Virus record (IMG/VR): IMGVR_UViG_3300045125_000071
Coordinates: 124,001-188,000 of that record
DNA: 64,000 nucleotides
Strand: one strand, 5' to 3'
Position numbers and translations under genes: made by a program. A model generated the notes under the pieces. That model was not told the DNA's origin, searched no databases, and was given only the letters and a program-made list of their open reading frames with translations. This document shows, piece by piece, positions 443 to 27,161 of this stretch; within the stretch, counting starts at the first letter, position 1, and each line of letters begins with the position of its first letter.

Positions 443-1614
443 TTAATCAAATGGGTCTTTACCACCATAATATTGGCGTATATTACTTAAAGTTTCTAAA
501 TTTTTTCGTTGTGTTTTATTTAATCCTGTTTTGTATGTTGCATATGTATCCACACCTTTTTCAAAACCATACAAAACACCACTAGTTGATGCACCAGCTT
601 TTAAAGCTGCTGGTGATTTCTTGCCTAATAATGATTCCAAAGATGATACAAACCTTTTCATTATTGATGAAAACCAGTCTAATGCTTGTGAAATAAAGCT
701 GGCACCTTTAGGAAAAGTTTTTGCCATTGCTGATTTTGCCTGAGTTAAAAATTTAGGAACTTTACTTGCACCAGAAATCATAGATTTTATTAAACTAGCT
801 AATTTAGGATTTTTACTTACTGCTACCTGTGCTTGTACTGGACTCATTTTTTTAGCGGTAATAAAGACGCTCTAGCGTTTTTTGCTAATACGCCAGTTGT
901 GACTAAACCTAAAATATCAGTACCTAAATCAAAAAAATGCCCTAGCATAGAATCATTTTTTCATTTTCTGGCCAATCATTAGAAGTAATCTGATATATAT
1001 CTAATGCGGTTATTATTGCCCATGGTATCCAATGAAATGCTAAACCAACACCCGTGGCAATTAAAATTGCGTCAGCAATCATAACAACTGTGCTATACAT
1101 AGCTTCTTTTAATTTTCTGAAAACCCAACGTACACCCTTTGCTAAGGAAACTAAAATTTCTTTCCACTCACCTTTTGAGATTACAACACCAAATTCTTTT
1201 AATCCTTCCCAACCTTCTATAAACGCATCTTTTACACCCTTCCCAGCATCAGCTAATTTTTCACCAAACCACGTATCTTGAAAAAATTCCATTCTAATAA
1301 TATATTTCTTAGACCATGTAAATTTTGCTTTTCTTCAAATATTGGTAATTTTAAAATATTTTCTTTAATATTTTGATATTCTTTATTATTTTCTAACGAT
1401 ATGTTATTAAATATTGTTTTGAAGATATCAATTGAATCCCATAAGTTACCCAAACTACGTTGTTCTTTTATATCAAATACATCATCTTGTAGAATGAAAT
1501 ATCTACCATCAACGGTTGTACATAATTCAAAAATGTAATTTCTTTTGTTTTTTAAATTATACAATCCCTTAATTCTATTTTTTCGGATTCGTTTAAGTTA
1601 AACGGTGTATACAT
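443..1614 (-). CDS. hypothetical, probably virion-associated protein (~3 homopolymer frameshifts)
   Basis: Track ORFs 1253-1564, 942-1292 and 443-847 join at homopolymer runs; start MYTPFNLNESEKNRIKGLY preceded by a TATTTAT motif. Confidence 0.6.
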
Positions 1615-1644
1615 TTTTCTAGTTTACAATATATAAATATACAA

Positions 1645-2317
1645 TTATAGTAAAGTGTTCCCCTTTCCTCTTTTAAAGATTGTCCAACAACATCTTTCCA
1701 TTTTGTAACAGCAATTTGATTTGCAGGACCTCTTGTAACACCGCTTTCCCATTTTGTTACTTGTGGGTATCCAGTACCACCGCCTTGTGTTGGTGTTGTT
1801 GATGCAGCAGCTGCGGCATCCTGTTCTTTCATTTCTTTTTTATTATTATAATAATTCAATATAAAATCATTTCCATACCCAGTACTAGATATTTCTTCTA
1901 TTGAAACTTCAATTGGTTCAATATTATTTTTTTCTCTTTATAATCTTCTAATTTTTCGGCACCAAAACCCTCAAAATATACTATAGGTTTACCATTAACC
2001 ATTTTAGATGCAATAATTTTACTTATTTTAGACACCCCCCAACCCTCTTCCTGGGATTCTCTATATGCAGCATCTATTGGTTTTTCATTTTTTTCCACCT
2101 TACCACCAGGTAAACCAATTTTCTTATTTTCAGATTTTTCATAGGGTCTAGTTGTTGCAGCAATTTTATTGTTTGGTAATTTAATAACCACAAACGCAGC
2201 AAACGCATTATCCTCCTCTTCTTCAGATAATTCTCTATAACCTTTACCTTCTTCTATAATTAATTTGTCAATTAATCTGCGTATTTGTTCTTCCTTGACA
2301 ACAACTATTTTATTCAT
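1645..2317 (-). CDS. NUDIX hydrolase fused to a C-terminal KWESGVTRGPANQI domain (frameshifted)
   Basis: Nudix box GLPGGKVEKNEKPIDAAYRESQEEG; reading continues across an A-run into ORF 1593-1859. Confidence 0.75.
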
Positions 2318-2682
2318 CTTCGTCATATATTGAATTATCTTTTTTGGCATACATTTTTATGTATTGTCCCGTTTTGCATTTGCTTCGTCTTCAATTTCAT
2401 ACCCAATATCTGGCGGTCTTACTTTTAATCTACCATCTTCCCATTGTTTATGGTGAACAAGTTCATGTGCAAGACTACGCATAACGTCAACTAACGCCCT
2501 ATTTTTACCGTTTATTTTGATTATCTTATTCTCCTTAGTATAATCGTAATTAGCGGTTGTTTTAAGCTCCTTTCTACCATTCTGTATCGAAATAGTTGGT
2601 ATGTTTTCAATTTGTAATTCTTTTTTTACAAATTTAGCAAAATCATTTAACGTATTTTTCTTTTTTCTGATAAAAAACTCAT
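2310..2682 (-). CDS. HExxH zinc metallopeptidase-like protein (frameshifted)
   Basis: SLAHELVHHKQ followed by EIEDEANAKAG. Confidence 0.6.
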
Positions 2683-2693
2683 AATAATAAATA

Positions 2694-2939
2694 TTATAAA
2701 AATTCTTCTTTTGGCGGTTCATTATGTTTATAAAACTCGATTAATAATTCAGAAACAAAATCTTCATCAATATCCTCCATATCTTTTTTGGTTATTATTG
2801 TTGGAGAATTTAATTCAATGTCTCTAAATAATAATTCATCTAACCTATAAGTATTTTCGGCATCACCCATAAAAGAAAATTCAACCTGGAGCGTTTGGGT
2901 TTTATCGTTGTAATAAAAGTTATGTATAATCATATTCAA
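2694..2939 (-). CDS. hypothetical protein
   Basis: 81-aa acidic ORF co-oriented with neighbours. Confidence 0.6.
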   Translation of the reverse strand: MNMIIHNFYYNDKTQTLQVEFSFMGDAENTYRLDELLFRDIELNSPTIITKKDMEDIDEDFVSELLIEFYKHNEPPKEEFL

Positions 2940-3017
2940 GTACTGATAATTATATTCATTTTTATCAAAATTTTATATTATATATGAAATTGATAAAATT
3001 TATTATAATTAATTAAT

Positions 3018-3224
3018 ATGGACTGGTATATTATTGAATATTTGTATCCCGAATCTTATAAATTGTTTATAAAAACAATGTATCCAAATACTGGATTAAT
3101 TAGTTTATCAGTATTAAAAAATTTTGATTTAAAAAAGTTGTACAGTTTTTTTGATAAACAAGAAATTTATCTTATATTAGAATTAAATAACACAAACCAG
3201 TGGAATTATATAATAAAAAAATGA
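3018..3224 (+). CDS. hypothetical protein (probably extends past a frameshift)
   Basis: ORF track; AT-rich leader. Confidence 0.45.
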   Translation: MDWYIIEYLYPESYKLFIKTMYPNTGLISLSVLKNFDLKKLYSFFDKQEIYLILELNNTNQWNYIIKK

Positions 3225-3641
3225 CACTTTTTTAAGTTCAAATTCATTAACCAGAAGTACAAGAGATGAAATTGAATCTGATGGTTTTATGCAATGTTTT
3301 AAATTTTTAGAAGTTGTTATAAATAATAAACAAAAAGTATGAAAGATTATTACACATTTGATTTTTATTTTGATTATTTATTACAAGCAATAAAAACTAT
3401 TACACACAAATAATAATACCGAATTTGAAATTAACACTGTTTATGAGTGGGTATTAATTATTGAAGATAAAACGCTTTTACGTTATAAAAACAGAAACTC
3501 AATAATATCTTATAGTAATGATTTAGAATTATTTATTGAATTAATTGATTATTTAATATCATTATTTGAAAAATCTGAGGAATATGAAAAATGTGAAAGG
3601 CTGCTAAATAGAAAAATTGAATGTAAACTTATTTAATATTT

Positions 3642-3866
3642 TTACTTAACTGTTTGGTAAAAAATATAAGACAACCAAAAACAACCTGAAATTGAATAAA
3701 AAATAATATCTGCACCCCAGTATGAGCCAGTGATTTCCATCATTAATTTGAACAATGCGTCGTAACCAAATGGGAGAAAAAACATCGCTAACATAAGTGA
3801 TATATCTCTGTAGAATTCCAACCTTTTCGCTTTGTCTTTCAAAGATTTTAATTTGTTTATCGCCAT
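3642..3866 (-). CDS. small membrane protein
   Basis: Two hydrophobic segments (ISLMLAMFFLPFG; IIFYSISGCFWLSYIF). Confidence 0.55.
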   Translation of the reverse strand: MAINKLKSLKDKAKRLEFYRDISLMLAMFFLPFGYDALFKLMMEITGSYWGADIIFYSISGCFWLSYIFYQTVK

Positions 3867-4510: not shown

Positions 4511-6849
4511 TGGTCAAATCTATTGTGTTCTGTTGGGGTCATAAGTAATATTCCAGGGTATAATTCATTTTTTTTAACAAGTTGATACATAAAACTCATT
4601 AACGTCTGTTCAAATGGTGATTGGAATTTTGTATTTATAAACATTTTTTTATTACCTATTCTACTAACTATTTGTGGCCAATTACAATAGTACACCTCAC
4701 CCGTAGCGTATGGTACATTTTTATATGATAATATTTTATTAAAATTTGTTTTTTGGGGCGTTTGAGTCTAAACCAAATTTTGGTAAATCATAATTATTTG
4801 GCCAAAAAGTTGTTCTAATATTTTGTGGTACATTATACCATGCCCATTGAGTTCCATTATCACCATAAAATTCGGAATAATTTAATTTTAAAAAATCAAA
4901 ATTTTCTATTTGCATAATCTCCAAAGATATTTTATATAAATTATTAATATATCTTCTAAAACCATTTCTACAAATTGAGTCTTTTTCTGGATAAAAAAAC
5001 ATATCATCCTCAAAGAAATAATAATAATCTAAATTTGTTTCATTTTGAAAATGTTCAGCTATAAATTGTCTACCACCAGATATACCTATATTGTCTTTTT
5101 TTATATGTTCAAATCCATATTGTTCACATAATTCTTCATATTTTGAAGTTGTTGATAAATCTGTTGAATTATTAAGCAAATATTTTTTCGGTTTTTCTAT
5201 ATAATTTTTATCATATTCTAACATCGATTCTATCAACACTTCAAATTGTTTTGGACTATTAAATGTTATTACATATAAACCAACATTATTAATGTCTAAA
5301 TTATTTTGAATTTTTATATTTTCAGATTTTTCCCGTTTTACTGTTAAATTATCGTTTTTTAAATTTTCAAAAAAGGTACCTAATAAACCATTATATTCAA
5401 TTTCATAATATTGAATTAATTCTGGGTATTTATATGTCATGATAGTGAATATACTTTCTTCAGTACCCATATAACCTTCATTTAGGCTATCATATAACAA
5501 AGTATAATAAATGTTATTTATTTCACCTATAACATCTTTTGGTCCACCAAATATCCCACCACGAGCAACTTTATTTACTTCAGCATCCGCATAGTTACAA
5601 ATTGCATTATATTCAAAACCGTGAATTTCTGTTTTACCATCATAAGGAAAACAAACAAATGAAAAATCATCAAAATATTTTTCTAATTTTTGTATAACCC
5701 TATCTTGCCAAAAATAACCTTCATGTACAGTATTCGTCAAACCACCGTCAACCCAAATCAAATGTGTTGAATCAAATTTATCCATTATTTTAGCATCATT
5801 CAATAAAAACATTTTAGACATTACAATCGGATTGTACATTTCCAATTTTGCTTGCGTACTATCTTTTAACCATTCAGCTTGATTATACCATTCAGGTTTA
5901 TTTCTAATTTCTTGTATTTTATTAAAAATATCAAAATTATTTTTGAACCAATCTAATTCTTTTATTATTATTTGCGTGTTTTCAAATTTTCTTCTATTTT
6001 CAACAAAATCTTTATATTTTGATTCTATAAAAATAATCATATTATCTTCTGTTTTTAGAAGTTTTTCTAGATTAATTAGATAATGTTCAAAACCTCTATT
6101 CCATCCTTCAGATAATTCATTTCTTTTTATATCCCATATTCCAGTAACTATTGTTACATTTTTTCTTACGTTATTATTTGATTTTTTAAATAATGTTTCA
6201 TGCAAATCGTTTCTTAATCCAACGATATCTTGACCATTAATTTCATAGATATATTTGTTATCCATGAATATTTTTTTAATGTCTTCTTGCTCTTCAATAT
6301 TTAAATTTATCCATTCGAGTCTTATAACCGATGGTTTATATTTTTCTAAATCAATTTGTTTAAATATTTTATAATCATGACCTTCCGCGTCAATTTTAAC
6401 AACATCAAAGTTTTCAATGTTGTGTTTTTTTAACACGGTTTCAAATCTTAAACAATTAACTTGTACTATTTTACCATACTTGTTAACAGTATCCTTATCA
6501 CCTTCACTTCCTAATCCGTTTTTTGGTGGATATACGGCACTCATACCGTAAAAACAACTATGTACAACTCCATTATCTATAACATCCCTATCAATTGTTA
6601 ACATATCTATCGTACCATCATAATCTGATATTGCACAATTTTCAAAAAATTTGAACCGCCTATGTTATTTTTTAATTTTTCAAAAAGATATGGTATTGGT
6701 TCGACATACAAACCAATAAAATTATACATATTTGTATAGCCAATCATCTCATCAAACATGACACCATCCATAGCGCCGATATTGATAACAAAAACATTCT
6801 TTTGTTTCTTTCCTATATAATGAAGAGCCTTATCAAAAAAATTACTCAT
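4480..6849 (-). CDS. multidomain protein: FkbM-type methyltransferase + HtrL/WlaTC-like glycosyltransferase + GT-A-like domain (frameshifted)
   Basis: INIGAMDG / VVKIDAEGHDY (FkbM); TIVTGIWDIKR...MSKMFLLNDA...WVDGG (HtrL-like); YYYFFEDD DxD-like motif; track ORFs 6607-6849, 4739-6604 and 4480-4695 join. Confidence 0.7.
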
Positions 6850-7460
6850 TTAATTTTTTATTTTACAAACCCAAACAATTTTATCAAAAGAATCTTTTTC
6901 AATTGATTCCAAATTATATTGTTCACAAACATCTTTTATATCATCATCTTTTATTTCACACCAATTCCAGATTTTATCATAGTAGTTATCTTCAAAATTT
7001 TGTAAATCACTACAATAATCATGCGCCATTATAATATCACCTGGTTTTAAATATTCAGACAATTGATTGAATTCTTTTACTTTATTTCCACCATCACAAA
7101 TGATTAATGTTTTACCATCATTTTGTATGTATGGAACAATGTAATCTTTTTTATCAAAATATAATCATTACCTTGACCAAATAAATTCTCACTTGAAATT
7201 TCTAAATTCTGCATTTCATTAAGTTTATCGTGAAATGAATTATGGTTTATATCATAAGATTTAATGATAGTGTCATATAAACCCAATTCATTTAAAGTAT
7301 CTCTTAAAAAATGTGTAAATCCGCCAGCACCAGTACCAATTTCTAGAATTCTATTTGGTTTATATTTTTCTAAAAAATACGTAAATACTTGAACGAAATC
7401 TTCATGTTGTTGTAACATTGTTCCTTTATATACTGATATACCAGTAATTGGTTTTTTCAT
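6850..7460 (-). CDS. class I SAM-dependent methyltransferase (CmcI-like; frameshifted)
   Basis: ILEIGTGAGG motif I; YLKPGDIIMAHDY. Confidence 0.7.
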
Positions 7461-7463
7461 ACT

Positions 7464-8307
7464 TTAATTATTTAGTTTTTCAAAAATATTATAAAAATAA
7501 ATTTCATCTTGAAAGTTATATTTTGCCATATCACTATCTTCATGATGCCATGTTGTAAAAAATTGCGGGTTAAAAATTTCCGTGTGCCTATCGTACAATA
7601 ATGTTAATAAATGTTCTTCTCTATCAAGACCACCAAATTGAACCATTTCATTTATAGCATTTTCATAATTTAGTAAAAAAATTTTTAATAATTCAACATC
7701 GCCACCAAATAAACCGCCAATAACATGTGAAGTTATATTTTTTGGGTTGGTCAAATAAAAATTTGGATTAGGTGATGAATCCATAATATGTTTTTCTTGT
7801 GTTGCAACTATAATCACTATTTTATCTAAACTATTCAACCCACTAACTAATTTAGGATTAAATAATGTACAATTAAAATATGAATTAAATCCTACACCAT
7901 CTATATATTTGTTTGGGAATAAACCACCATATGATAAACCGCAATCAATCCAATATATATAATCATAATTTTCATGTAAATGATTTTTCATCCAGATAAA
8001 TTTTCCATGCATCACTTCATTGCACCTATCTGTTTTAACATTATTCATTTTTTCTTGAAAATAATTATGATACGGGTGTTTAAATAAATCATATTCAATA
8101 AATCTTATTAATTGATTTGAATTTTGTGATATAAATTTTTCTTGTAAATTATTTATTTCACTTGGACTGGTATAAATTACAAAATCGGCTTCGGTTTTCA
8201 ATAATGTTTTTAAGGAATTAAAATAATGGTGGTATCTACCAGTTCTACCACCTAATTTCGTGTTATCTAACCCATCATAAAAACAAGTAACAAATAATGT
8301 TTTTCAT
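7464..8307 (-). CDS. HtrL/WlaTC-like glycosyltransferase (frameshift near start)
   Basis: N-terminus LFVTCFYD; YIYWIDCGL; HVIGGLFGG; resembles the middle domain of 4480-6849. Confidence 0.6.
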
Positions 8308-8949
8308 AATATTATTTTTAAAAAATACATGATTAATTGGTTTATCAAAATTATCTTCTGGCCACAACCACCTACATAATAATCGTTTATCGGTTCAACA
8401 GGAAAACTATTAATATATTTTGAGCAATGTATTAATATTGAATCTTCAAAAATTGGTTTTAATTTGGTTCTTAAAAATTGTTGGTCGGAATCGTACCCCC
8501 ATTTATCCCAACCGTCCATTAATTTTTTTATAACAACCTTATCATTTTTTTAATCCCCACATACCACCCATTATATCAAAGTGTGAAATATTGTCTCTAA
8601 TAGAGTGCAATAACATGTCTGATTCTATAAATAAATCAACACATTTCTTTTCTCTATATGATAACCTAGCATCCGCATCCCTAACAATCATGATTTCCAC
8701 ATCGTCATCATCTATAGCTAAAAACCTCCACATCATTTGAAATATATCTTTACGATTTTCCATATTAATCAATTCAACATTATCATAAGTTTCTAAAATT
8801 GATATAGTATTTGATGATACCGAATCGTCATAATATACCCTACAAATCCAATCTGGGTATATTATTTTTGCCAACTCAATATTACAAATCATTCCTTTGG
8901 AATATCTTAAATCAGAACCATAAAGAGAAAATGATATTATTTTTTTCAT
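8304..8949 (-). CDS. putative glycosyltransferase-associated protein (frameshifted)
   Basis: IISFSLYG...YPDWICRVY...MMWRF...RDADARLSYRE motif set typical of glycan clusters; joins ORF 8304-8519. Confidence 0.6.
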
Positions 8950-9896
8950 AATAAATTTTTATGGTATGTGTCAAAAATTTCTAATAACATATTTTCAGAA
9001 TTATATGGGTCTACAGGTTTATGGTGTATATTATTTAATATACCATATGAAATAAAATTACTAATCCAACAATAATTATTAAATAGATATATTTTTTTAC
9101 TAAATGAAAATAAAATAAATTCTATTAGACAATATTCCCAATAATCATTATCGTTATAGTCTCTATTAACTGTTTTTTTATAATCTTCATCTAATAATAT
9201 AAAATTGTTATACATTTTTTTTAATGTATTTTTTATTTCAATATTATTTGAAAAAACTAAAATTTTATTTTCATTTTTTGCAATTTTTTTGATGTGTGTT
9301 AAAGCATCATCAGTAAATTCAATATAACCTTTAAATATATAATCTCTAACCGCAAAAGGTGTTTTATTGTTATTCAAAATATTATCATTAAAATAATCTG
9401 CAATATCATCCAAATCCCTAAAATGCATGATACTAAAACTATCTAATTCATATTTTATTTTTATATTTTTTACTTTTTCAATTATTGAATTTGAAAATTT
9501 TGGGTAATCATCATATTTTTCTATTGTTTGATTACCAAGTCTAGATAAGTTTATATATGGGAAATCTAAATCATCGTTAAAATTAGTTGGAGCAAAAACA
9601 TCATAACAATGCATACCAGTTATCCATTCATTTATTGGAAAAATTAGTTTATAATCACCTAATGATTCACAAGACTGTGCAACATTTGTAATTATAATAT
9701 CATCAAAATAATTGTAATATTTTTTTCAAATAGATTTATAAAATCAATCTCTCTTTTAGAATTAAAAATTAATATTATATTATAATTTTTTCTTTTAATT
9801 GTTTTGATAAAAAATAAATTTCACAAAAATAGGTATAAAAATCTCCAATACCCGAAGTAAAATTTATTTGTATATAAATCAAATTATTGTTCCCAT
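8946..9896 (-). CDS. putative fucosyltransferase-like glycosyltransferase (frameshifted, start approximate)
   Basis: N-terminal FTSGIGD, IMHFR, LIEFILFS...SNF pattern resembling GT-B fucosyltransferases. Confidence 0.4.
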
Positions 9897-10824
9897 TCAT
9901 CCAAACCTAAAAGTTTATATGTTAAATTTATACTACCATTTAGGGATAGATAATCATCATAATATTTCCTGGCGTTTTTTGATATAAAATTTAAAAAATC
10001 AATATCATCTTTAACTTCCAAAAATTTATCGGTAATCATTTTTGCGTGAGATGCATTACCTAATCTATCTATTATTAAATCCGTAGGTTTTTCTATTGAA
10101 ATGTAATGAAAATTTGGAATTAACGGTATTGCCATTTTGTTGATATATTCAAATCTTATGATTGGAACACCTAAACCAAAATTTTCAACATCCCTATAAC
10201 AAAATTCACCTCTCCCTGATATTGATAATGCTACTTTATATTTTATTAAATCTCTAGCATATGCATCAAAATTACCCATAGGAAGACCGCCTTCAAAAAA
10301 TTCACTATTAAAATATGAAAGTATTTTTCTATCTTCTATGGATGTACCTCTAAAATAAAATTTATCTATAAAATTTGATATGTTATTTCTTTCACTATAG
10401 ATTGAATCTATATCGTATAAATTAGATGGAAAATAAATCCATGGTGAATATTTTGATAAATTATCTTGACCAACATGTCTAATCAATTTATTTTCATCAA
10501 ATTGTGAAAAGATAATTTTTTTGCAAAGCGGATTAGGATGGTGATTTAAAATAGCGCCTGTCAAATCGTCAGAAACAGATAAAACAACAAATTCAGAAGT
10601 CTCTTTATTTTCTATAATCATTTCACACTCTAGCATAAATGACTTAGTAATATCATTCAATAATTCAACAGGATAATATGAAATGTTTGCTTTATCGTAA
10701 TAAACATCTTCTATTACATCAAATTTTTGTTTTAAATGTTCTATAAAATTTTTAAAAAAATATTATAATATCTATAATTCCAGGAATGTTCATTTTGGGG
10801 TGTATGTATTATAATTTTAGTCAT
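9884..10824 (-). CDS. putative glycosyltransferase (GT47/GT90-like C-terminus; frameshifted)
   Basis: FYFRGT...YKVALSISGRGEFCYRDVENFGLGVPII. Confidence 0.5.
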
Positions 10825-10833
10825 CATTTATAA

Positions 10834-12080
10834 TTATAAATTACCAATTATTCTCTCACACCAACCCTTAGTACTACTATATGGCCAAACAACCCAATAT
10901 TTCGGTTTTATATCTGTTTGAAATTCTCTCCATACCTTACAATATCCATCTGGGTCATTTTTCATTCTATTTATCTCATTCCTATCCGCATCTTTTCTGA
11001 AGATTGTTTCGTCATTTTCATCATGAAACGCAACAGCCCAAAATTCATAATCATTTTCTGGAACCTTATCATAACCAATATCAATACAATGTTTAAATAT
11101 TTTTAAAAGGAATTTTCAAAATCTTCACCATATAATGGTGGATTTGGTGCTATGTTGTTATCCAACGTATATTTTTGTATTGCACGTTTTTTAAATGAAA
11201 TACCAGCATATCTTTCATAATCTTCCAAAGTTCTTTCTTTTTCCAAAATCATATGGTCCGAAATCAATATCTTTAACTTCACCATCCATTTCGAAAAGTT
11301 TTCTATTCTTTTTATGTGAGATATTGTTTTTTTCAACCCATTTTTATCATCGTCCCATTGCTTTGTTCTACCTTTTCTAGTATACTCATGCCAAACAACG
11401 ACTTTATGTGGGTGAAATAAATCGTAACCCCAGGTATACGCTCTAACAGCAATTGAAATTTCTTCACCATGAAAATAATAATCTGGGTCATGGGGCACTT
11501 CTAAAACAAATTGACCTAGTGTGAATGCAAAATGTGCAGAATAAAATCTCGCTGGAATTGGTTCATTCAATTCTTGATAATTATCAATGGATGCTGGTAA
11601 AAAGAATATTGCGCCTTCTGGTATGAATCTATCAAAATTCATTTTCCAAGGAATCATTATTCTTGATTCTGAGTCATTATCTGGGTCAAATGAAGATACG
11701 TAACCAGTCAATAACGGTTTTTTATGACCTTTATCTTGTAGTTGCTTAATCATGTTTATACATTCCTCATCCCAATTTTCAACAAATCTGTGATGAGAAT
11801 CTATTTGTAGTGTATAGTCTTCACCATTGTAATTCTGTTGTAATGTATTTCTTGCCCAACAGGCACCTTTTGAATCTAAATAGTTAATGTCAACAATTTT
11901 GAACCTACCATCATCTTTAAATTCGTCTAAATTATCCCATTCATCACTCAATGAATGTTGCCAAGCAATAGAAAATACCAAATTTTCAGGGTATTTTGCG
12001 TTTTTTATACAATCTTTAATTGTTGGAATTAATTGCGGGTCTCTATAAGACGCAATTTGAACAAATATTTTATTATTCAT
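10834..12080 (-). CDS. GlcNAc-transferase family (Skp1-type) glycosyltransferase (frameshifted)
   Basis: IFVQIASYRD, LQIDSHHRF, YFHGEEI, HEYTR motifs. Confidence 0.75.
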
Positions 12081-12189
12081 GATTTTTTAGTGTATTTATA
12101 AAATATAGGTAAAGATGTTGAAAAAATACACCTATAAATTTTTTTACAATAAAAAATCTTTACATTTATTAAAAACATAATTTAATTAT

Positions 12190-12537: not shown

Positions 12538-13286
12538 CTAATTCGAAAGTGTCTTTAAATTCTTTACCAGATTCTTTATAACTTTTATTTGTTTCATCTT
12601 TATGTTTTCGGTGAATTGCCAATTCCAGCATAACTCATTTTTTACATCAAAACCATAAAAAGTTAACACTTGTTTTTGAACTTTTACAACATCGGAACCC
12701 CGCCAATTTTGTCCAACAGCGATAATACCACAAGAAATATCTTTAATAAGATTAGATTCACCCAAAGTAGAATGTCTATTTTCCAACCAGGTTAATCTTT
12801 CAATCAAATTTTGATAATGTGAATTCATTTGACCCCATCTAATGCTACCAAAAAACAATACACAATCAGATTCGAATAATTCTTTACTTATTTTCCATAA
12901 CTCATCATCGGGATTATTGATGTTTCTCCAACATCTATGGTTCCCAGTTGGATTTTGTCTTTATCTTTTAATGCCGCTTTTTTAATCCACATTCATTACC
13001 TTTCATATGCGAAACATTTGCTTCACATGCATAAATTTTCAATTCTGGTACTTCGATTAACTTACATTTTGATTTTCCTAAGTAAGATTGTATTGCTTCT
13101 GCTAATATTGTTGATTTCGGTTTCTCTTTCAATTCCTTTGCTGCCCATCCGCCGCGATTTGAAGTTGTAAGAAACAATATTTTTCTTTCCTTCTAGAAAC
13201 TTAACTGTCTTAATTAATTTTTTATAATGAGGATTGTCTTTTTTAAGATTTGGGTCAATCTCCTCTAATATTTTGATTAGTTCCAT
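12538..13286 (-). CDS. flavodoxin-like NAD(P)H-dependent FMN reductase / iron-sulfur flavoprotein (frameshifted)
   Basis: FLTTSNR...KS..LAE; IYACEAN..C..C; DDEL..ISKELFESDCIVFFGSIRWG; three track ORFs join. Confidence 0.65.
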
Positions 13287-13615
13287 TATTTTTTCTTTTC
13301 CTCAGTTTGAGTAGTATAAATAGCTTTTTTATGTTCTCTAATCTTATTTTTCAATTGGTTAATCAATGTATGCGCTGATTGTAAATTTGTTGAAATTTTA
13401 GAAACCCTACCATTTGATATGGTTTTTAGACCATCAGGTATACAATCTTCCAATTTTCTTAATTCTTTGAGTGTTTCATTTAATGCGTTTTCCAATTCTT
13501 CGATTTTATACTGAACTCTTGAAAATTCATCGCGTTTCACCTTTGAAGTTTCTTCGGATATGACCTTTAAAAACGCATTTTTTATAATTTCTTCAGATAA
13601 TAGATTCTTGTCCAT
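13286..13615 (-). CDS. hypothetical coiled-coil protein
   Basis: 109-aa ORF with upstream TATTTAT motif. Confidence 0.7.
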   Translation of the reverse strand: MDKNLLSEEIIKNAFLKVISEETSKVKRDEFSRVQYKIEELENALNETLKELRKLEDCIPDGLKTISNGRVSKISTNLQSAHTLINQLKNKIREHKKAIYTTQTEEKKK

Positions 13616-13692
13616 ATGTATATAAATACTTAATCTTTACCATTTTTTTATTTGGATTTTATTTCCTATATTTTATTTATAAAAACAAATTT

Positions 13693-14767
13693 ATGCTTTT
13701 TGATTTTGACGATATTTTAATTACACCTGCAATTACATCCCCAATTAACTCAAGAAAGGAAGTTAATCCTTTTTATGCTGATGGGTTTCTTCCATTAATG
13801 ACCGCCCCAATGGATACTGTTGTTGATGTTGAAAATATGAATATTTTCAAAGAAAATAAAGTACACGTTGTATTACCAAGAAATACCTATTGTGTTGATG
13901 ATGTCTTTTCATCATTTGGTTTGGACCAATTTATTGATTATTTTATCACAACAAAGAGGACATCGGATAAACCATTTAAAGTGTTAATTGATGTTGCAAA
14001 TGGTCATATGGAGAAATTAATCACTACCACAGAAATAGCGAAAAAATGTATGGCGACACCATGATATTGATGGTGGGTAATGTAGCAAACCCAAATACAT
14101 TCCAAAAATTTTGCGAAACAGATGTTGATTATGTTAGAATTGGTATTGGTAATGGTGGCGGGTGTTTAACGACTGTACAGACAGGTATTGGTTATCCTAT
14201 GGCTTCACTCATAACAGAATGTCATAAAAAAAGGTCTAATTTAAATGAATCAATAAATTTAAGTTTATTTTTTGACAAAAAATTAGAAAAAAAACGTATA
14301 AAAACCAAAATCGTTGCTGATGGCGGGTTTAAAAAATACTCAGATATTATTAAAGCATTAGCGTTGGGTGCCGATTATGTGATGTTGGGTTCAATATTCA
14401 ATAAAGCGTTGGAAAGTGCGGGTGAAACAATAAGACATACGCCTGAATTAACCGTAGGTCAAGTTGTTGACCAATATTCACAAGAGGCAAGAGATATGTT
14501 TGAAGCAGAAATCATTTTGAGAAAACTGTTCAGAGGTATGAGTACTAAAGAGGTACAGAAGAAGTGGGGTAAAGATGACCTGGTAACATCTGAAGGTATT
14601 GTTAAATCACACAAAGTAGAATATACATTATCAGGGTGGAGAAAGAATTTTGAGGATTATTTGCGTTCTGCCATGAGTTACACGGGAAAAAAGGACTCCA
14701 CGAATTTATTGGTGGAGTTCAATATGAAATGATTACACAAAATGCTTTTAAAAGGTTTGACAAGTGA
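13693..14767 (+). CDS. IMP dehydrogenase / GMP reductase family protein (frameshifted)
   Basis: FDFDDILI, TAPMDTV, IDVANGHM, catalytic loop RIGIGNGGGCLT, IVADGG, FRGMS. Confidence 0.85.
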
Positions 14768-17709: not shown

Positions 17710-17916
17710 TTATGTTTTTCTAAATTTTTTTGAGAAAGTAACGGCTTGACTCAATGTTTTAAATTCTTTAATTACCCTATATGGATTTGGTATATATTTT
17801 TTATATTTTTTTACATAAAGCAACTTACCACTATCAACTTCATATAATGTTGAATTATTTTTTTTAATTTCATTAATATCAAAATATCCAATTTTTGTTA
17901 CCAATTTCTTGCTCAT
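17710..17916 (-). CDS. hypothetical protein
   Basis: 68-aa basic ORF. Confidence 0.55.
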   Translation of the reverse strand: MSKKLVTKIGYFDINEIKKNNSTLYEVDSGKLLYVKKYKKYIPNPYRVIKEFKTLSQAVTFSKKFRKT

Positions 17917-19729: not shown

Positions 19730-20424
19730 TATTTGTTAAAGTGTTTTATTTCATAACCTTTTGCTGTTTTTTGATTACCAGATAAAACATGTTTTACATT
19801 ACTTTCTGAACATTTTAAAAATTCCGCAACTTCTTTAGTCGTTTCAAATTTAGCAATAATTATATTATTTTTTAAAATAATTTTTTCACCGTGGTAATTC
19901 CAAACTTTATCTCTAATTATTTTTTTCCTTTTTCACTTAATTTTTGTTTTGTTTTTTCTGTATGTTTTTTCCCATAAAAAGGATTTTTATTACCAGAATA
20001 TCTACCCTTCATTGTTTCAGATTGTCTTTTTTTTGTTCTTTAGTTAATACTCTTTTATTATTTTTTCCATAACTATTACCTATGTTTGTCAGTCTATATG
20101 CTAATCTAGCTTCTTCATATGCTGATGATGATATGATTCTTTTTGTTTTATTTGACATAGATAACATTTTATGAAAAGCTAATGCCATTTGTCTATCTTT
20201 ATATATTATCCATAATAACCAATGCGCAATAAAATGTTCTCTAGCTGTTAATAATACAATGTTTTCATTATTTTTTGGTCTATTACTATTACCTTTTCCA
20301 CCTTTACATTTTGGTACTATATGATGTCCTTCAAAATATTCACCATTCTTTTTTCTTTTATTCTATCGTTTTTCATTAATAACCTACTAAACATTAAATC
20401 ATCATATATTTTTTTATAATTCAT
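19712..20424 (-). mobile_element. HNH homing endonuclease with NUMOD-like C-terminus (frameshifted)
   Basis: Read by eye: YFEGHHIVPKCKGG...NIVLLTAREHFIAHWLL; C-terminal IAKFETTKEVAEFLK. Confidence 0.7.
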
Positions 20425-20446
20425 AATAATCTTTTAATTAATATGG

Positions 20447-21298: not shown

Positions 21299-21387
21299 AA
21301 TTTTATAATTTTATAATTTTATTCAATTATATATAAATATTTCATTTTGAAATTATTATGTATTTATAATAATAACAAAATATTAGT

Positions 21388-22575
21388 ATGAGTAAGACTC
21401 TTTTTATATTAAAAGAAAACCAAATAAAAAAACTTATTGGTAATATATTATTGGAACAACAAACTATTACTAATAACTCCACAACAGTTAATATATTTCC
21501 AAAAACACCTTTAGGTAATTTATTTAGCTATGGTGAATTTCAATCTGAAAAGGTCAAAGATTATATTTTAACGAATTTGAAACCAAGAATAGAGGATTTT
21601 ATAGCAAAAAGTGATTCGGCTCAATTTACCATCAAAATATCTGCTGGGGAATCTCTTGTCACAAATCCAAAAGGTTTCGAGACAAGAGGAAGTTTAGCAC
21701 TAGCCAGAGCTAATTCAGTAAATCAATATTTTCAAGAAGCGTTTGGTGATTTAATAAAAAATGGTGTTATAAAAATAGAATCACCAAATAATGTAAGTAA
21801 AGTTCAAATCGGTACAACACCTTATGAAAAAGGTGACCAAAACAACCCAAATTTAGTGGCTAAATATAAAGCCGAGCAGTTTGTAAATTTTGAAATTGTC
21901 GGTTCAGGAACAAAAACTGAAGTTAAAACAACAACATTATGTGAAACAGAACCATTACGGAGTAGCGGTGGTTATATTATGGCAGATAATGATTATACTA
22001 ATATAACAAATTGGAATTTAGGTAAAGGTAGTGGGGATGTATATATTATGTACGATGTTTACCAACAATTAGATATTTTATATTTTGAATATAATGGTCA
22101 AATATATGGGGACACATTATTTCATGGAAGTACTGGGGATACACAAAGAATATTTTTAGGCACAAGTTTAAGAGCGAAATACGGTAACGGTACTCTACCT
22201 AATCAAATGGCGAACAACACATTTATACCATTAAATCAAAGTGATAGTAGAATATTTAAAAGTTTAGATGATATGGGTGAATGGGGTTTGGTTAAAAGTT
22301 TTCAAAACACATTTGGTCCAAATTCTTCATTACATAACCCACAATACATGGCAGCATTCCAGGAATTTGATGAGACTAAAAACAAGAGTAGGTTAATTAA
22401 AAATTTAGGCGTTGATTTCCCTTGGGGTTATTTGGATAGTAAAATAGGTAAAAAAGAAGTAACCATTGGTCCGTTTAAAAAAGTTGATGGGATTGACACT
22501 ATTAAGGTTATTAATGTTGCCCCAGTCGGAACTACTGGGTGGGTAATATCGTTGGTCTGTACAAATAATCCTTAA
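21388..22575 (+). CDS. putative virion protein with shared N-terminal leader and OmpA-C-like domain
   Basis: ILKENQIKKLI leader; SAGES...SLALARANSV motif; TATTTAT upstream. Confidence 0.6.
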   Translation: MSKTLFILKENQIKKLIGNILLEQQTITNNSTTVNIFPKTPLGNLFSYGEFQSEKVKDYILTNLKPRIEDFIAKSDSAQFTIKISAGESLVTNPKGFETRGSLALARANSVNQYFQEAFGDLIKNGVIKIESPNNVSKVQIGTTPYEKGDQNNPNLVAKYKAEQFVNFEIVGSGTKTEVKTTTLCETEPLRSSGGYIMADNDYTNITNWNLGKGSGDVYIMYDVYQQLDILYFEYNGQIYGDTLFHGSTGDTQRIFLGTSLRAKYGNGTLPNQMANNTFIPLNQSDSRIFKSLDDMGEWGLVKSFQNTFGPNSSLHNPQYMAAFQEFDETKNKSRLIKNLGVDFPWGYLDSKIGKKEVTIGPFKKVDGIDTIKVINVAPVGTTGWVISLVCTNNP

Positions 22576-23032: not shown

Positions 23033-24028
23033 ATGAAAAAAAAAGTATCAATTAACAGTGGCGTTGCTGTGCCACAATCCTTCATTACAAAGAACAAACA
23101 GAGGGTAAAACAGTATGCAGACACCGTTTATCTTGAAAACGGGGACGAGTTCGAATTAGAACTCTTTAATCCAACACAAAATAAGGTTTTGGCTAAAATT
23201 GAACTGAACGGAACAAGTATCGGTAGTGGTGTTGTTCTCCGACCAGGGGAAAGGGTATTCTTGGAAAGGTATCTGAATGAACCTAAAAAATTCAAATACG
23301 ATACCTATTTTGTGGATGATAATAATCCAAGCGTTGATGCTGCAATCAAACAAAATGGGGATGTTATGGTATCGTTCTATGATGAAGAGAAACCTGACTA
23401 TTTGTATAATGGTACTTGTTGATATCAGGTAATTATTTGTCATCAGGCACAACATACCACAAATTACCCAACATTTACAACTTTTAATGATAACTTCACA
23501 TACACAACAAATGGGTTGAATATGTATAGAGATACATTATCATTCAGTTCTTCAGAGGTAAAAAGCGCATCAATAAGTTCACGAAGTTTTGCCAAGACAA
23601 AAGAAACTGGCAGAATTGAGAAGGGTGGTGACTCATCACAAAAATTAACATATGATTCAACAAGATTTAAAACCACAAAAATCGCAACAAACTGGTGGAA
23701 AATTTTGCCAATGTCAGAAAAGGTAAAAACGATTGATGAGGTTCAGACATTCTATTGTTCAAGTTGTGGAACAAAAAGAAAAAAGGATAATTATAAATTT
23801 TGTCCAAACTGCGGAACAAAATTTGTTGAAGAAAAAGAACCTAAAATCATATTCACCGAAGATGTTAGATATATTCATTATATTAATGGTGAATTTAGAA
23901 CTTTAATGATGTCATCGTATAATGATACCTTAGATAAATTTTTGGAAAGACATAAACACAAATCCAAAATTATCATAAAAAGAGATAGTCTGACAGAAAA
24001 TAGTTTGAGGGCGATTTTAATAGATTAA
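23033..24028 (+). CDS. hypothetical phage protein with C-terminal zinc ribbons (frameshifted)
   Basis: ENGDEFELELFNP...VLRPGERVFL; CSSCG...CPNCG; ORFs 23033-23422 and 23516-24028 join. Confidence 0.6.
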
Positions 24029-24373
24029 AATAAAATAACACAAGGTCACAAAAAAGGGGGGTTTAAACCCCTTTTTTATTTCATGTATTTCTTTTTCTTT
24101 TGATATCATTTTATCGACCGCATTTGTAAATTTAAAACATTTGTCTGTAATGTCATTTGCTTCGTGGTCGAACATTGTTAATTTTACACTATTATGTTTA
24201 ACTAACATATCTGGATGATGGTTTTGTTTTTTTGCAATATTGGCAACTTTGTTTACAAAATCGATAACATCGTCATATGATTCAAATTTATATGTTTTAA
24301 CCAATTTTCCACCAGTTTCTTTCCAATCAGATTTTATTTTATCAAGTTGTTTTTCGGTTATAATAATTTTCAT
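24017..24373 (-). CDS. phhB: pterin-4-alpha-carbinolamine dehydratase
   Basis: LVKTYKFESY...FVNKVANIA...NHHPDM.V...V.L...H....IT.K. Confidence 0.85.
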   Translation of the reverse strand: MKIIITEKQLDKIKSDWKETGGKLVKTYKFESYDDVIDFVNKVANIAKKQNHHPDMLVKHNSVKLTMFDHEANDITDKCFKFTNAVDKMISKEKEIHEIKKGFKPPFFVTLCYFILIY

Positions 24374-24376
24374 ATA

Positions 24377-24986
24377 TTATGATTTATATAATAATCTCAA
24401 TAATTTTTTAGTTAAATCTGGATTGTTTCTATTTGCGTGAATATATTTGTATAACGGTATTCTGAATGATTCGATATTTTTACCAGGGAAATTACTTTTA
24501 AAATTTTCTTTATCTGCCAATAAATCTGGCGATTCAATATTCGGTGTTTTTTTTACTTCTTCCTTTTTTTGTTGTGGTGGTGCTGGGTATGTTTTATTTA
24601 TTTGTTGCATTGTTTTGCTTGGTTCATTTGGTGCGTTTGCGCTGGTTGTTCATTTAATTGTGGTCTATCAACATTCAACATTTCAGCATCATAATCCCTT
24701 CTTTTCAAACCACCAGCCTCAACTTCATCAACTAACATATTTGTAATCGCATCCAGAAAAGCATACATTTTTTCTCTATCTTCATAATATGCTGGATGTA
24801 ATTTAATATTGTTTATAACAATTTTAGCCATTTTATATGGTGATGGTTCCATAGATTGCCCAGGCATAAGTTTACCACCTTCATAAGAATAATCTTCTTT
24901 ACCAAGCTCATCCATTTGCGCATATTCTTCTTGCAATCTTTTTTGTAATTTCTTTAATTGCAATTCCGTCAACTTAATTTTTTCAT
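24377..24986 (-). CDS. hypothetical protein with shared leader (frameshifted)
   Basis: MKKLKLTELQLKKLQKRLQEE; ORFs 24598-24972 and 24377-24610 join. Confidence 0.55.
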
Positions 24987-24987
24987 A

Positions 24988-25101
24988 TTATTTGATGTTA
25001 ATATTTTTTAAAACAGAGATATTATCGTTGATTCTTTTTGTTGTTTTTTTACCTGACTTGATACTTTTTGTTGGTCTATGTTTTTTTTGTTTTTTTGCCA
25101 T
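24988..25101 (-). CDS. small basic peptide (37 aa)
   Basis: MAKKQKKHRPTKSIKSGKKTTKRINDNISVLKNINIK; TATTTAT upstream. Confidence 0.5.
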   Translation of the reverse strand: MAKKQKKHRPTKSIKSGKKTTKRINDNISVLKNINIK

Positions 25102-25155
25102 TTTAGTATTATTGTTTCAAACGATATCTCTTTATTTTATATATAAATATCAATT

Positions 25156-25355
25156 TTAATTTTTATCCATATCTTTATTATCATCTGATTTTCCAGAGAA
25201 TGTCTTATATTGTCTTAATCTCTTAGCTTTAAAAGCGGGAGAATCACTGCTCTCATAATCTGCTAATGCTTTTTTCGCTGCGCGTTTTTAAGTTCTGGAG
25301 ATAATTCAACGATTAGATTTTTTAATTGTGTTTCTGTTAAAATAATTTTTCTCAT
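25156..25355 (-). CDS. small protein with shared leader (one frameshift)
   Basis: MRKIILTETQLKNLIVE...; TATTTAT upstream. Confidence 0.55.
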
Positions 25356-25371
25356 ATATCAATAAATATGT

Positions 25372-26279
25372 TCAATAATATCTATTATTAACTAAAAAAT
25401 AAATCAAGTTCTTCCATTCTTCTTTTTGTAAACCCCGCATGAATTTACCGTTATCATAAACATATTGCAACCAGTATGTTTTGATTGCTTTTGGGTCTTC
25501 ACTATTAATTGCGTTTTTCAATCCATCGCCAAGACTCCCAACATTGTATAGAAAAATTGCTAAAGCATCGAACTCATTTTGACTAAGAGGAACTGAAATA
25601 TCTTTTTTAATTTCTGGCAAAACTTTTTCATTCATATGGCTCATTAGATATTTTGCAGCCATTGCTTTAGATATGTGGAATTTGGTTCCTTTTTGATATT
25701 TCTTTAATTCTGGATGGTTTTTAACCAATGTACCATAGCCAATGGTCAATGCTCCGCCACACGGTTTTGATGTTGGTGCGTCAGGACAATGGTCATCATA
25801 AACCTGGCTTCTGAAATCTTCCGTTTTTTGTGATTGCAATATTTGAATCGCAAGTCTTGAATATGTTTTAGCTGCTGGTTTACCAACAGGTAACGCATAT
25901 ACATGAAATATTCTGTTTTTTCCAAACTTGCCAATTTTTATCAATTTTGCTTTCGGATTCTTTGTTTTTACCATATCACAAGAAGGACATTTTCCATTAT
26001 CAATCTCTTCAGAAAAAGGAATCAACAAAATGACAGGCTTTTCATTTTCAGCCGTCTCAAATTTCAAAATAGATTTTCCCATATCTGATAATGTTATTTG
26101 GATGGATTTTAAAACAATTTTTTTCCTTTTGTAAGTGTTTTCACTTTTTTATAAAAATTATTTAATGTCACATCCTGTATGGTATAATTTTGTGGTTTTA
26201 TAGATAATTCGTTTTCATTTATTAATGTTTTTATAACAATCGATAATTGAGATTCTGTCAGTTTAATAAAATTTGGCAT
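25372..26279 (-). CDS. GH24 phage lysozyme with N-terminal extension and shared leader (frameshifted)
   Basis: VYDD...LTIGYGT; LSQNEFDAL..FLYNVG; W..YVY.NGK..RGL; start MPNFIKLTESQL. Confidence 0.8.
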
Positions 26280-26327
26280 TATGTAACTATTTTCTGATAG
26301 ATAAATATTTATATAATAAAATAATCA

Positions 26328-27068
26328 TGAAGAATAACATTATATTAACGGAATCACAATTGAAAAGAATAATTGAGAAAGTAATTGCTGAGCAAGATAA
26401 ATCATACACTGTTGGCGATTTAAAAAATATGGGCTTGCTTGGTGGTAAACCACCAACACAACAATGGACACCGCCAGCACGTGGTGAAAAATATGGTGAA
26501 AGTAGAGGTCCTGGTAGAATTGCAAAAGAAGGAAATATAAGACCTTCCATAACATTGCCGAGTGGTTTATTCAAAAATGGAATTGATAGAATTGATACAA
26601 GTTCTGTTGAATTTAAAAATGGTATAAACGCAATTGCTGATGCGGTCAAAAAAAGGGACAAAATATAACGGTATTCGTTGAGGGTGGAGCATCGGCTGTC
26701 GGTCAAGTAGAAGGATATGATAATAATGCATTAGCAAGTAGAAGAGCGCGCAATTTTATTGCACAAGCACAAAAAATGTTCCCATCTATAAATTTCAAAA
26801 CATCAACAAAAGTGGGTGTATCGACACGAAAAAATTCACCAGAAGCGGAAAGTGAGCAATATGTTAAATTGATGTTTCCTGGCGAAATGTCACCAGAAAA
26901 AAATATCAAGCGGTTGATAATACACAACTGGTAATGAATTATCGTAAACCAAAGAAACCAGTAGAAACCAAAAAATAGATTATAAAACATATTATAAGGT
27001 ATGTTATTGGATACCAGAAGAGTATTATAGCCAAGTAATGTCTTTAATTCAAAAAGTTGGGGGTCTAG
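26328..27068 (+). CDS. putative virion protein with shared leader, OmpA-C-like (frameshifted, end approximate)
   Basis: MKNNIILTESQLKRIIEKVIAEQ; VEGGASAVG...NNALASRRARNF after the frameshift. Confidence 0.55.
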
Positions 27069-27086
27069 AAGTATAATAAAATAATC

Positions 27087-27161
27087 ATGAAGAATTACAT
27101 TATATTGACAGAATCTCAATTAATACAAGTTATAAAGACTATTATAGCTGAAGGCAAATAA
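27087..27161 (+). CDS. 24-aa peptide consisting only of the shared leader
   Basis: MKNYIILTESQLIQVIKTIIAEGK*; 5' region duplicates that of the 26328 gene. Confidence 0.5.
   Translation: MKNYIILTESQLIQVIKTIIAEGK

What the first reader, a model, noticed from the sequence alone, without database searches (positions are those of the whole stretch)
1614..27161. Shared N-terminal leader on unrelated proteins, a possible capsid-targeting signal
Seen: a motif like [IL]-[IL]-[TK]-E-x-Q-[LI]-x-x-[LI]-[IV]...[IL]-x-E begins the NUDIX protein (2317), 21388, the pterin dehydratase (24373), 24986, 25355, the GH24 lysozyme (26279), 26328 and 27087; related LNES starts occur at 1614 and in 46033. Most are preceded by TATTTAT. 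Established: T4 internal proteins carry an N-terminal capsid-targeting sequence removed by prohead protease after (I/L)-x-E. Inference: a modular tag that packages enzymes into the head for injection.
Basis: partly seen in the sequence, partly recalled or inferred. Interest (0 to 1): 0.68.

Follow-up and report, generated by a model that had tools for sequence, protein, structure and literature searches.

The report
Swappable capsid-address leader on phage proteins
A 22-residue N-terminal leader that ends in the cutting motif of the T4-type head protease sits on many unrelated proteins of this large uncultured T4-like phage and hundreds of its relatives, so it most likely marks proteins loaded into the capsid, although no virion data exist yet.

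Summary
In the 251-kb T4-like viral contig that contains the window, nine ORFs begin, 1-4 residues after Met, with h-h-L-T-E-x-Q-L-x-x-h-h...[LIV]-x-E. Seven are in the window. A strict pattern gives 8 hits against 0.075 in shuffles. A profile finds the leader only at N-termini in six related contigs (42 of 42 hits). At least 453 IMG/VR loci carry a near-identical version, and the best 78 are fused to 47 unrelated cargo families. Near-complete 257-322 kb genomes carry 7-16 tagged ORFs each, and 10 of 12 large contigs encode a T4 gp21-type protease (Peptidase_S77). Synonymous sites are free, so the peptide is what is selected. Orthologues of the 395-aa cargo carry either of two different leaders, both ending at an invariant E-Q. 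One orthologue lies directly after the major capsid gene. AlphaFold models the leader as a detached, low-confidence helix. Tagged cargo includes a GH24 lysozyme (frameshifted here, intact in orthologues), a NUDIX protein and an OmpA-like protein. The pterin dehydratase is a look-alike, not a member. Capsid targeting and cleavage are strongly suggested by analogy with the T4 capsid targeting sequence but are not demonstrated. This is a new variant of a known kind.

The parts
1898..2317 (-). Leader (residues 1-22, nt 2252-2317, ending I-I-E) fused to a NUDIX-domain protein of 139 aa
   Evidence: Leader profile 30 bits. Pfam NUDIX over residues 40-92, E 1.3e-7. PHROGs nudix families, plus a portal-fusion family.
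21388..22575 (+). Leader (residues 1-23, nt 21388-21456, ending L-L-E then Q) fused to a 395-aa protein whose first folded domain is OmpA-like
   Evidence: Profile 25 bits. 230 homologues carry two alternative leader types with an invariant E-Q junction. In the AF2 model residues 1-31 have pLDDT below 50. Foldseek matches OmpA C-terminal domains, E 8e-5. An orthologue lies directly after Gp23 in L108. TATTTAT at 21361-21367.
24598..24986 (-). Leader-bearing ORF of about 128 aa, function unknown; its ATG at 24986 is out of frame by one base in an A6 run
   Evidence: Profile 12.5 bits without the Met. No Pfam or PHROG match.
25263..25355 (-). Leader ORF that stops after 30 aa; another frame continues as a small basic peptide, so a frameshift is probable
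   Evidence: Profile 39 bits. Frames shown. TATTTAT (reverse complement) at 25362-25368.
25372..26279 (-). Leader fused to a GH24 lysozyme; one gene split by a frameshift between 26082 and 26109
   Evidence: Profile 37 bits. Pfam Phage_lysozyme E 1.3e-16. Intact orthologues P0161-P0170 align across the break and keep the leader.
26280..26326 (.). Divergent intergenic region carrying TATTTAT on both strands (26301-26307 and 26306-26312) in front of two leader genes
26327..26931 (+). Leader (ending I-A-E then Q) fused to a protein continued after a frameshift (26327-26668, then 26641-26931); the second part has an OmpA-like sequence motif
   Evidence: Profile 42 bits. Frames. No Pfam or PHROG match. 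The OmpA-like motif was read by eye only.
27087..27161 (+). Leader-only ORF of 24 aa plus stop; its start and upstream DNA are nearly identical to those of the 26327 gene
   Evidence: Profile 40 bits. DNA comparison. The next gene (27194-27631) has eight homologues that all start without a leader.
24017..24373 (-). Pterin-4a-carbinolamine dehydratase: a look-alike, not a member
   Evidence: Pfam Pterin_4a covers residues 8-88. Solved dehydratases align from residue 9-16 and have 15-19 residues of their own before that point. Leader profile 8.3 bits, in the noise. No [LI]-x-E before the fold begins.
13286..13615 (-). Probable degenerate leader (ends I-S-E-E) on a 109-aa protein
   Evidence: It looks orthologous, by reading the two translations side by side, to an ORF in G012 that starts at 17811(-) and carries a scoring leader (18 bits). 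No alignment was run. TATTTAT (reverse complement) at 13622-13628. It does not itself reach 5 bits.
46033..46705 (+). Frameshifted S-adenosylmethionine-lyase-family gene with an N-terminal extension of about 40 aa that ends L-N-E then S; only a candidate for a divergent leader
   Evidence: Pfam S-AdoMet_lyase E 2.2e-8 on the second frame. ATATTTAT 18 nt upstream. No profile match.
1565..1614 (-). Start with a short N-terminus ending L-N-E then S on a frameshifted ORF; weak candidate
   Evidence: TATTTAT reverse complement at 1633-1639. No profile support.

Best explanation
The leader is a capsid-targeting propeptide, the counterpart in this clade of the T4 capsid targeting sequence (CTS).

Proposed mechanism:
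1. Late in infection, tagged proteins are made together with head proteins.
2. The amphipathic N-terminal helix (about 17 residues after M-K/R-K) binds the scaffolding core of the prohead, so the protein is built into the head.
3. The gp21-type Peptidase_S77 then cuts after the [LI]-x-E that closes the leader and frees the mature protein inside the capsid.
4. The protein can leave with the DNA at the next infection.

Because the address is a short self-contained module, any gene that acquires it becomes cargo. This would explain the many unrelated tagged families, the leader swaps between orthologues and the leader-only remnant.

Shown here: the leader exists, it is strictly N-terminal, it is selected at the peptide level, it is modular, it ends in the T4 cleavage motif, it co-occurs with the protease, and tagged genes are linked to head genes.

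Inferred: binding to the core, cleavage, packaging and ejection.
For: 1. T4-type head machinery is in the same contig: Peptidase_S77 and Gp23. The capsid protein carries a conserved [IL]-x-E followed by A/S about 8 residues before the mature core in three clade members.
2. The leader is real and N-terminal: 8 strict hits against 0.075 expected, and 42 of 42 profile hits at 14 bits or more in seven contigs start at Met.
3. It ends in the protease motif: [LIVM]-x-E lies at +8 to +17 in 39 of 42 leaders, against 22% of control ORFs.
4. In IMG/VR the near-invariant version ends V-[IL]-N-E, after which sequences diverge completely. The best 78 loci hold 47 unrelated cargo families. At least 599 stretches matched and 453 were confirmed.
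5. Orthologues of the 395-aa cargo carry one of two different leaders, joined to the mature part at an invariant E-Q.
6. Gene position: one orthologue lies immediately after Gp23 in an intact head module. In this contig, tagged small ORFs lie directly after the capsid gene, at contig positions 79056(-) and 76317(+).
7. Genomes of 257-322 kb that CheckV rates 93-100% complete have 7-16 tagged ORFs each, and 10 of 12 large contigs encode Peptidase_S77.
8. Synonymous codons are free: 0.517 observed same-codon fraction against 0.533 expected.
9. AF2 models the leader as a detached helix with pLDDT below 50 in front of a confident fold.
10. TATTTAT upstream is shared with the scaffold, protease, a sheath-like gene (named from its sequence only), a gp25-like gene (likewise) and the endolysin.
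11. T4 precedent: gp21 cuts after L/I-x-E, and a 10-residue CTS is sufficient to package foreign proteins (PMC9026906; PMC3012670).
Against: - There is no direct evidence: no virion proteome, no N-terminal sequencing, no cultured member.
- The closest cultured phage, Flavobacterium phage immuto, has no match to the leader.
- [LIVM]-x-E arises easily in any amphipathic helix rich in Glu, so the motif alone is weak evidence.
- The leader is twice as long as the T4 CTS, and no sequence homology to it was shown.
- The complex prediction of leader with scaffold gave no answer, which counts neither way.
- Some cargo (lysozyme, OmpA-like and LysM domains) acts on peptidoglycan. That is not an obvious job for proteins delivered to the cytoplasm.
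- One complete 62-kb phage with no Gp23 or S77 match carries the first half of the leader on one ORF.
Confidence: 0.65

Rival explanations
1. The leader is an assembly or sorting signal for some destination other than the inside of the head. Candidates are the tail or baseplate, a capsid decoration site, or the cell envelope. It might or might not be cleaved.
For: Several cargo proteins act on or bind peptidoglycan: the GH24 lysozyme, a lysozyme with LysM in a relative and the OmpA-like domain. That would suit a tail-tip or periplasmic role.
Against: - The leader has no hydrophobic core and carries several charges, so it is not a Sec, Tat or SAR signal.
- Its end matches the head protease motif.
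- Tagged genes sit next to capsid genes, not tail genes.
- No T4-type tail-targeting leader is known (my own knowledge).
Confidence: 0.15
2. The leader is a permanent N-terminal helix with a generic job and is not removed. Such a job could be oligomerisation, DNA binding or partner binding through a coiled coil.
For: It is an amphipathic helix with heptad-like spacing. The Glu positions follow helical periodicity.
Against: - A generic domain need not begin exactly at Met in 42 of 42 cases.
- It need not be joined to cargo by a disordered linker through an invariant E-Q.
- It need not be interchangeable with a second, different leader on the same orthologue.
Confidence: 0.12
3. The conservation lies at the nucleotide level. 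It would then be a translation-initiation region, an RNA element or a recombination cassette that happens to be translated.
For: - A shared upstream TATTTAT motif.
- Two leaders (26327 and 27087) are nearly identical in DNA, and one has lost its cargo. This suggests recombination at leaders.
Against: - Among 41 leaders the same-codon fraction at identical residues equals the codon-usage expectation (0.517 against 0.533).
- The peptide is kept across contigs of 26-42% GC.

Recombination at leaders may occur, but as a consequence of the conservation, not its cause.
Confidence: 0.05

Closest known systems
[quoted passage not shown]
   Same: - It sits at the extreme N-terminus.
- It is conserved on otherwise unrelated, fast-evolving proteins.
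- It ends in L/I-x-E.
- A gp21-family protease and a Gp23-type capsid protein are encoded in the same genome.
- Tagged genes are partly clustered.
- Reviews of T4 already suggest the CTS is an evolutionary device for loading varied proteins (PMC9026906; PMC3012670).
   Different: - The leader is about 22 residues, against 10 in T4.
- It has a different sequence. No homology to the T4 CTS was shown here; T4 gp22 and gp24 N-termini, read, share only a loose E-h-h-x-E flavour.
- The scale differs: 7-16 tagged ORFs per genome and at least 47 cargo families in a small sample, against a handful in T4.
- At least two interchangeable leader types exist.
- Cargo includes recognisable enzymes and peptidoglycan-binding domains.
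- All members are uncultured and nothing has been verified at the bench.
Propeptide-processed head and ejection proteins of giant phages (phiKZ, 201phi2-1, SPN3US)
   Same: Large phages with a gp21-related protease that cuts many head proteins after Glu. Many of these are packaged and ejected (PMC9026906).
   Different: Their motif is S/A-x-E. No single conserved leader sequence shared by unrelated cargo is described in the review read here.
Encapsulin cargo-loading peptides
   Same: A short conserved peptide that addresses diverse enzymes to the interior of an HK97-fold shell (my own knowledge).
   Different: They are usually C-terminal and not cleaved, the compartment has no portal or DNA, and the sequence is unrelated. 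This comparison was not tested here.

Membership tests
T4-type CTS / prohead-protease propeptide cargo | The leader lies at the extreme N-terminus of the precursor | tested here: met
   All 42 profile hits at 14 bits or more in seven contigs begin at Met. Nearly all matches in 12 further genomes start at profile position 1.
T4-type CTS / prohead-protease propeptide cargo | The same leader sits on otherwise unrelated mature proteins | tested here: met
   47 unlinked families among 78 loci once the leader is removed. In the window it sits on NUDIX, GH24, OmpA-like and unknown proteins.
T4-type CTS / prohead-protease propeptide cargo | The leader ends in the gp21 cleavage motif L/I-x-E | tested here: met
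   39 of 42 leaders against 22% of controls. Invariant E-Q junction in 52 homologues. V-[IL]-N-E in the IMG/VR set.
T4-type CTS / prohead-protease propeptide cargo | A gp21-family protease and a Gp23-type capsid are encoded in the same genome | tested here: met
T4-type CTS / prohead-protease propeptide cargo | Sequence relationship to the T4 CTS itself | not tested
   The T4 ip genes were not fetched. Only T4 gp22 and gp24 N-termini were read. The length differs (22 against 10 residues).
T4-type CTS / prohead-protease propeptide cargo | Late co-expression with head proteins | tested here: inconclusive
   TATTTAT is enriched upstream of leader genes and is also found before scaffold, protease, sheath-like, gp25-like and endolysin genes. 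There are no transcript data.
T4-type CTS / prohead-protease propeptide cargo | The protein is present in the mature head with the leader removed | not testable with these tools
   No cultured member and no proteome.
T4-type CTS / prohead-protease propeptide cargo | The leader binds the scaffolding core | tested here: inconclusive
   Complex prediction of leader with the 517-aa scaffold returned 'no answer'.
Leader-tagged set: pterin-4a-carbinolamine dehydratase at 24373 | An extra N-terminal segment in front of the catalytic fold, closed by [LI]-x-E | tested here: not met
   Pfam covers residues 8-88. Solved homologues have their own 15-19 residues before the aligned start. Profile 8.3 bits.
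Sec/Tat/SAR signal peptides | An uninterrupted hydrophobic core of about 10 or more residues | tested here: not met
   The leaders carry E, Q, K and R throughout. Hydrophobic moment is 0.6-1.2 with mean hydropathy 0.2-1.1.

The most novel reading that the evidence does not exclude
A whole clade of uncultured T4-like phages of about 250-320 kb uses a sequence-readable, interchangeable address label, in at least two leader types. With it they load a large and rapidly changing arsenal of proteins into the capsid for co-injection. The arsenal would include enzymes, peptidoglycan-active proteins and perhaps anti-restriction functions such as a SAM lyase. If so, the injected proteome of uncultured phages could be listed from sequence alone.
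Probability: 0.5. Interest if true: 0.8.

Novelty: new variant of a known kind. Interest (0 to 1): 0.7.

Why it matters
Proteins that travel inside the capsid act before any phage gene is expressed. In T4 they include anti-restriction and host-takeover factors.

A conserved leader that can be searched for would turn hundreds of 'hypothetical' ORFs of uncultured large phages into candidate injected effectors. It would give a ready-made packaging tag for engineering such phages. It would also extend the T4 CTS principle from a few proteins in T-even phages to a general cargo system with many families.

No paper in the library searched holds the motif strings.

Tried and rejected
- Complex prediction: complex prediction of a 40-residue leader with the 517-aa scaffold of L108 gave no answer, score 0.00. 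It counts neither for nor against binding.
Neither was retried. The same questions were put through alignments by reference (A1, A4).
- The search for related loci with A1 failed because the alignment had no stretch conserved enough.
- The closest cultured relative, Flavobacterium phage immuto, has no leader match, so no laboratory model was found.
- The listing of cluster members gave no names for homologues of the 395-aa cargo.
- A profile of the type B leader finds only one clear member in the seven contigs, in G001. It does not pick up the 'LNES' starts at 1614 or 46033.
- Rejected: nucleotide-level conservation as the cause.
- Rejected: the pterin dehydratase as a tagged protein.
- Rejected: the idea that 27087 is the broken start of the 27194 gene. 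Homologues of that gene have no leader.
- Cargo size and pI show no clear signature: median 137 aa, bimodal pI.
- The high-GC part of the window was compared with relatives and with known phages, without result.


Full report
CONTEXT
The window is positions 124001-188000 of a single 251,358-bp IMG/VR viral contig, linear, with a CheckV completeness estimate of 75%. GC is about 28-30%, except for a stretch of about 40 kb near 40% that covers window 28-64 kb.

The contig is a distant T4-like phage. It encodes a Gp23-family major capsid protein (E 8e-65) and a gp21-type prohead protease, Peptidase_S77 (63 bits). These lie in a head module read from its translations as portal, protease, acidic scaffold, then capsid protein; only the protease and capsid protein have family matches in this contig. 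The closest cultured capsid proteins are 41-42% identical over about half the length: Flavobacterium phage immuto and Microcystis phage Mel-JY01.

The assembly carries many homopolymer frameshifts. The portal, protease, scaffold and several window genes are split. Broken ORFs here are therefore most simply sequencing errors.

THE OBSERVATION
- A strict pattern has 8 matches in the six-frame translation of the contig. Shuffles within stop-to-stop segments average 0.075, and reversed sequences give none.
- Every match lies 1-4 residues after a Met that closely follows a stop.
- A profile built from 18 leaders (A1) separates cleanly. Eight ORFs score 25-42 bits, and the frameshifted 24986 start scores 12.5. 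Everything else is below 10, including the pterin dehydratase at 8.3.
- Two solid members lie outside the window beside the capsid gene, at contig 76317(+) (122 aa) and 79056(-) (57 aa). The second is immediately downstream of the capsid gene.

CORRECTIONS TO THE LIST
- 26328 is 26327.
- The 24986 ATG is one base out of frame in an A6 run.
- The lysozyme is one gene split by a frameshift. Ten intact orthologues of 295-311 aa, up to 84% identical, align across the break, and the closer ones carry the leader.
- 27087 is a 24-residue leader followed by a stop. The next gene has eight homologues that all start without a leader. The DNA of the 27087 start is nearly identical to that of 26327. It is therefore a duplicated leader without cargo.
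- The pterin dehydratase is a look-alike. Pfam covers residues 8-88. Solved dehydratases have their own 15-19 residues before the aligned start. There is no [LI]-x-E before the fold.
- An ORF at 13615(-) has a degenerate leader. This rests on its resemblance, by reading, to a scoring ORF in a related contig.

THE LEADER IS A CLADE-WIDE, STRICTLY N-TERMINAL PEPTIDE SIGNAL
- A degenerate DNA pattern for nine leader residues found 33 IMG/VR loci. About 24 are N-terminal on varied ORFs, in contigs of 29-42% GC.
- The larger of those contigs have Gp23. The smaller ones are rated as 5-34% of genomes of roughly 300 kb.
- The profile gave 42 hits at 14 bits or more in seven contigs, and all begin at Met.
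- One 99-kb contig has 17 matches at E of 1 or less. The cultured phage immuto has none.
- A second alignment of the commoner variant (A4) matched at least 599 stretches in IMG/VR, of which 453 were confirmed from the Met onward.
- In the best 78, a nearly invariant 22-residue leader ends V-[IL]-N-E, and similarity then stops. With the leader removed, they fall into 47 unlinked families.
- Twelve large contigs carry 3-16 tagged ORFs. The seven rated 93-100% complete (257-322 kb) carry 7-16. Ten of the twelve encode Peptidase_S77.

PEPTIDE, NOT DNA
At positions where two leaders share a residue, they share the codon in 51.7% of pairs. Codon usage alone predicts 53.3%. Selection therefore acts on the peptide.

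THE END OF THE LEADER
- [LIVM]-x-E lies 8-17 residues after the invariant Glu in 39 of 42 leaders, against 22% of control ORFs at matching positions. The commonest position is +13.
- T4 gp21 cuts after L/I-x-E (PMC9026906).
- The capsid proteins of three clade members keep an [IL]-x-E followed by A/S just before the conserved mature core. This suggests the same specificity, which is an inference.

MODULARITY
The 395-aa protein at 21388 has 230 homologues, all unnamed.
- Their N-termini fall into two types. One is the leader described here. The other is longer and contains R-I-L-x-L-H-E.
- Both join the conserved mature part through an invariant E-Q preceded by a hydrophobic residue two places back.
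- In a 146-kb contig with an intact head module, the type B orthologue lies directly after Gp23. A type A leader sits on another protein 4 kb away.

STRUCTURE
AlphaFold2 with 52 homologues gives mean pLDDT 87.8. Residues 1-31 are below 50, with a short helix at 10-21. Confident folding starts near residue 35. The first domain matches OmpA-like peptidoglycan-binding domains (Foldseek E 8e-5).

EXPRESSION SIGNAL
- TATTTAT lies within 50 nt upstream of 6 of the 9 leader genes here and 28 of 42 across the clade, ending 4-32 nt before the ATG.
- Only 33 of 365 other ORFs have it (p = 6e-5).
- The motif also precedes the scaffold, protease, sheath-like, gp25-like and endolysin genes. The sheath-like and gp25-like names come from reading the translations only.
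- A late promoter is a reasonable inference, but it is untested.

INTERPRETATION
The anatomy matches the T4 CTS principle: a short N-terminal address, sufficient for packaging and removed by gp21, on diverse internal proteins.
- Confidence that these leaders direct proteins into the prohead and are cut off at [LI]-x-E is about 0.65.
- Still open are the binding partner (the complex test gave no answer), cleavage itself, and what peptidoglycan-active cargo does.
- The rivals are a different destination, a permanent helix, or a nucleotide-level element. They are less consistent with the strict N-terminal position, the invariant junction, the leader swaps and the free synonymous sites.

NOVELTY
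The principle is known from T-even phages. This leader sequence, its length, its two interchangeable types, its spread over hundreds of uncultured large phages and the number of cargo families are not in the searched literature. I file it as a new variant of a known kind.

Noticed in passing
window 28000-64000 (contig about 150-195 kb): A stretch of about 40 kb at roughly 40% GC inside a 28-30% GC phage contig. It has few matches to related contigs and none of note to known phages. It could be a chimeric assembly, an acquired island or a mobile element.
   Followed up: partly
whole contig, e.g. window 13693-14732, 25372-26279, 26327-26931; L004 12181-12869 and 14362-15893: Frequent frameshifts at homopolymer runs split essential genes (protease, portal, scaffold) and window genes. 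They are most likely sequencing errors rather than pseudogenes.
   Followed up: partly
window 46033-46705 (+): An S-adenosylmethionine-lyase-family gene (the family of an anti-restriction enzyme), frameshifted. It has an N-terminal extension of about 40 residues ending L-N-E then S, and ATATTTAT upstream. It may be another packaged protein.
   Followed up: partly
homologues P0003-P0120 of window 21388-22575; L108 10001-11161: A second, longer leader type (containing R-I-L-x-L-H-E and ending Y-L-x-E-Q) replaces the first type on orthologues. Contig 117149(+) looks like a hybrid of the two types.
   Followed up: partly
window 27087-27161 (+): A leader-only ORF whose start is nearly identical in DNA to the 26327 gene. 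It suggests duplication or recombination at leaders with loss of the cargo.
   Followed up: yes
window 1898-2317 (-): The NUDIX cargo also matches a PHROG annotated as portal protein (profile positions 538-603 of 794). Nudix domains are therefore fused to portal proteins in some phages.
   Followed up: no
contig 73311 (+); L108 13882-14343 (-); L009, L029: A widespread family with a Y-M-F-F motif lies a few kb from the capsid gene. It carries the leader in relatives, but in this contig it has a different N-terminus ending L-K-E.
   Followed up: no
G014 (62.6-kb complete contig with terminal repeats), 10302-10343 (-): A small phage with no match to Gp23 or Peptidase_S77 carries the first half of the leader on a 74-aa ORF. 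This may be chance, transfer, or a hint that the helix has a use outside T4-type heads.
   Followed up: partly
window 4700-12100 (-): A run of large minus-strand ORFs that look like glycosyltransferases or methyltransferases when read by eye. They were not scanned.
   Followed up: no
window 20164-20272; L004 5144-5728: Short DNA matches to homing-endonuclease genes of T4-like coliphages, and a GIY-YIG-like ORF near the head module.
   Followed up: no
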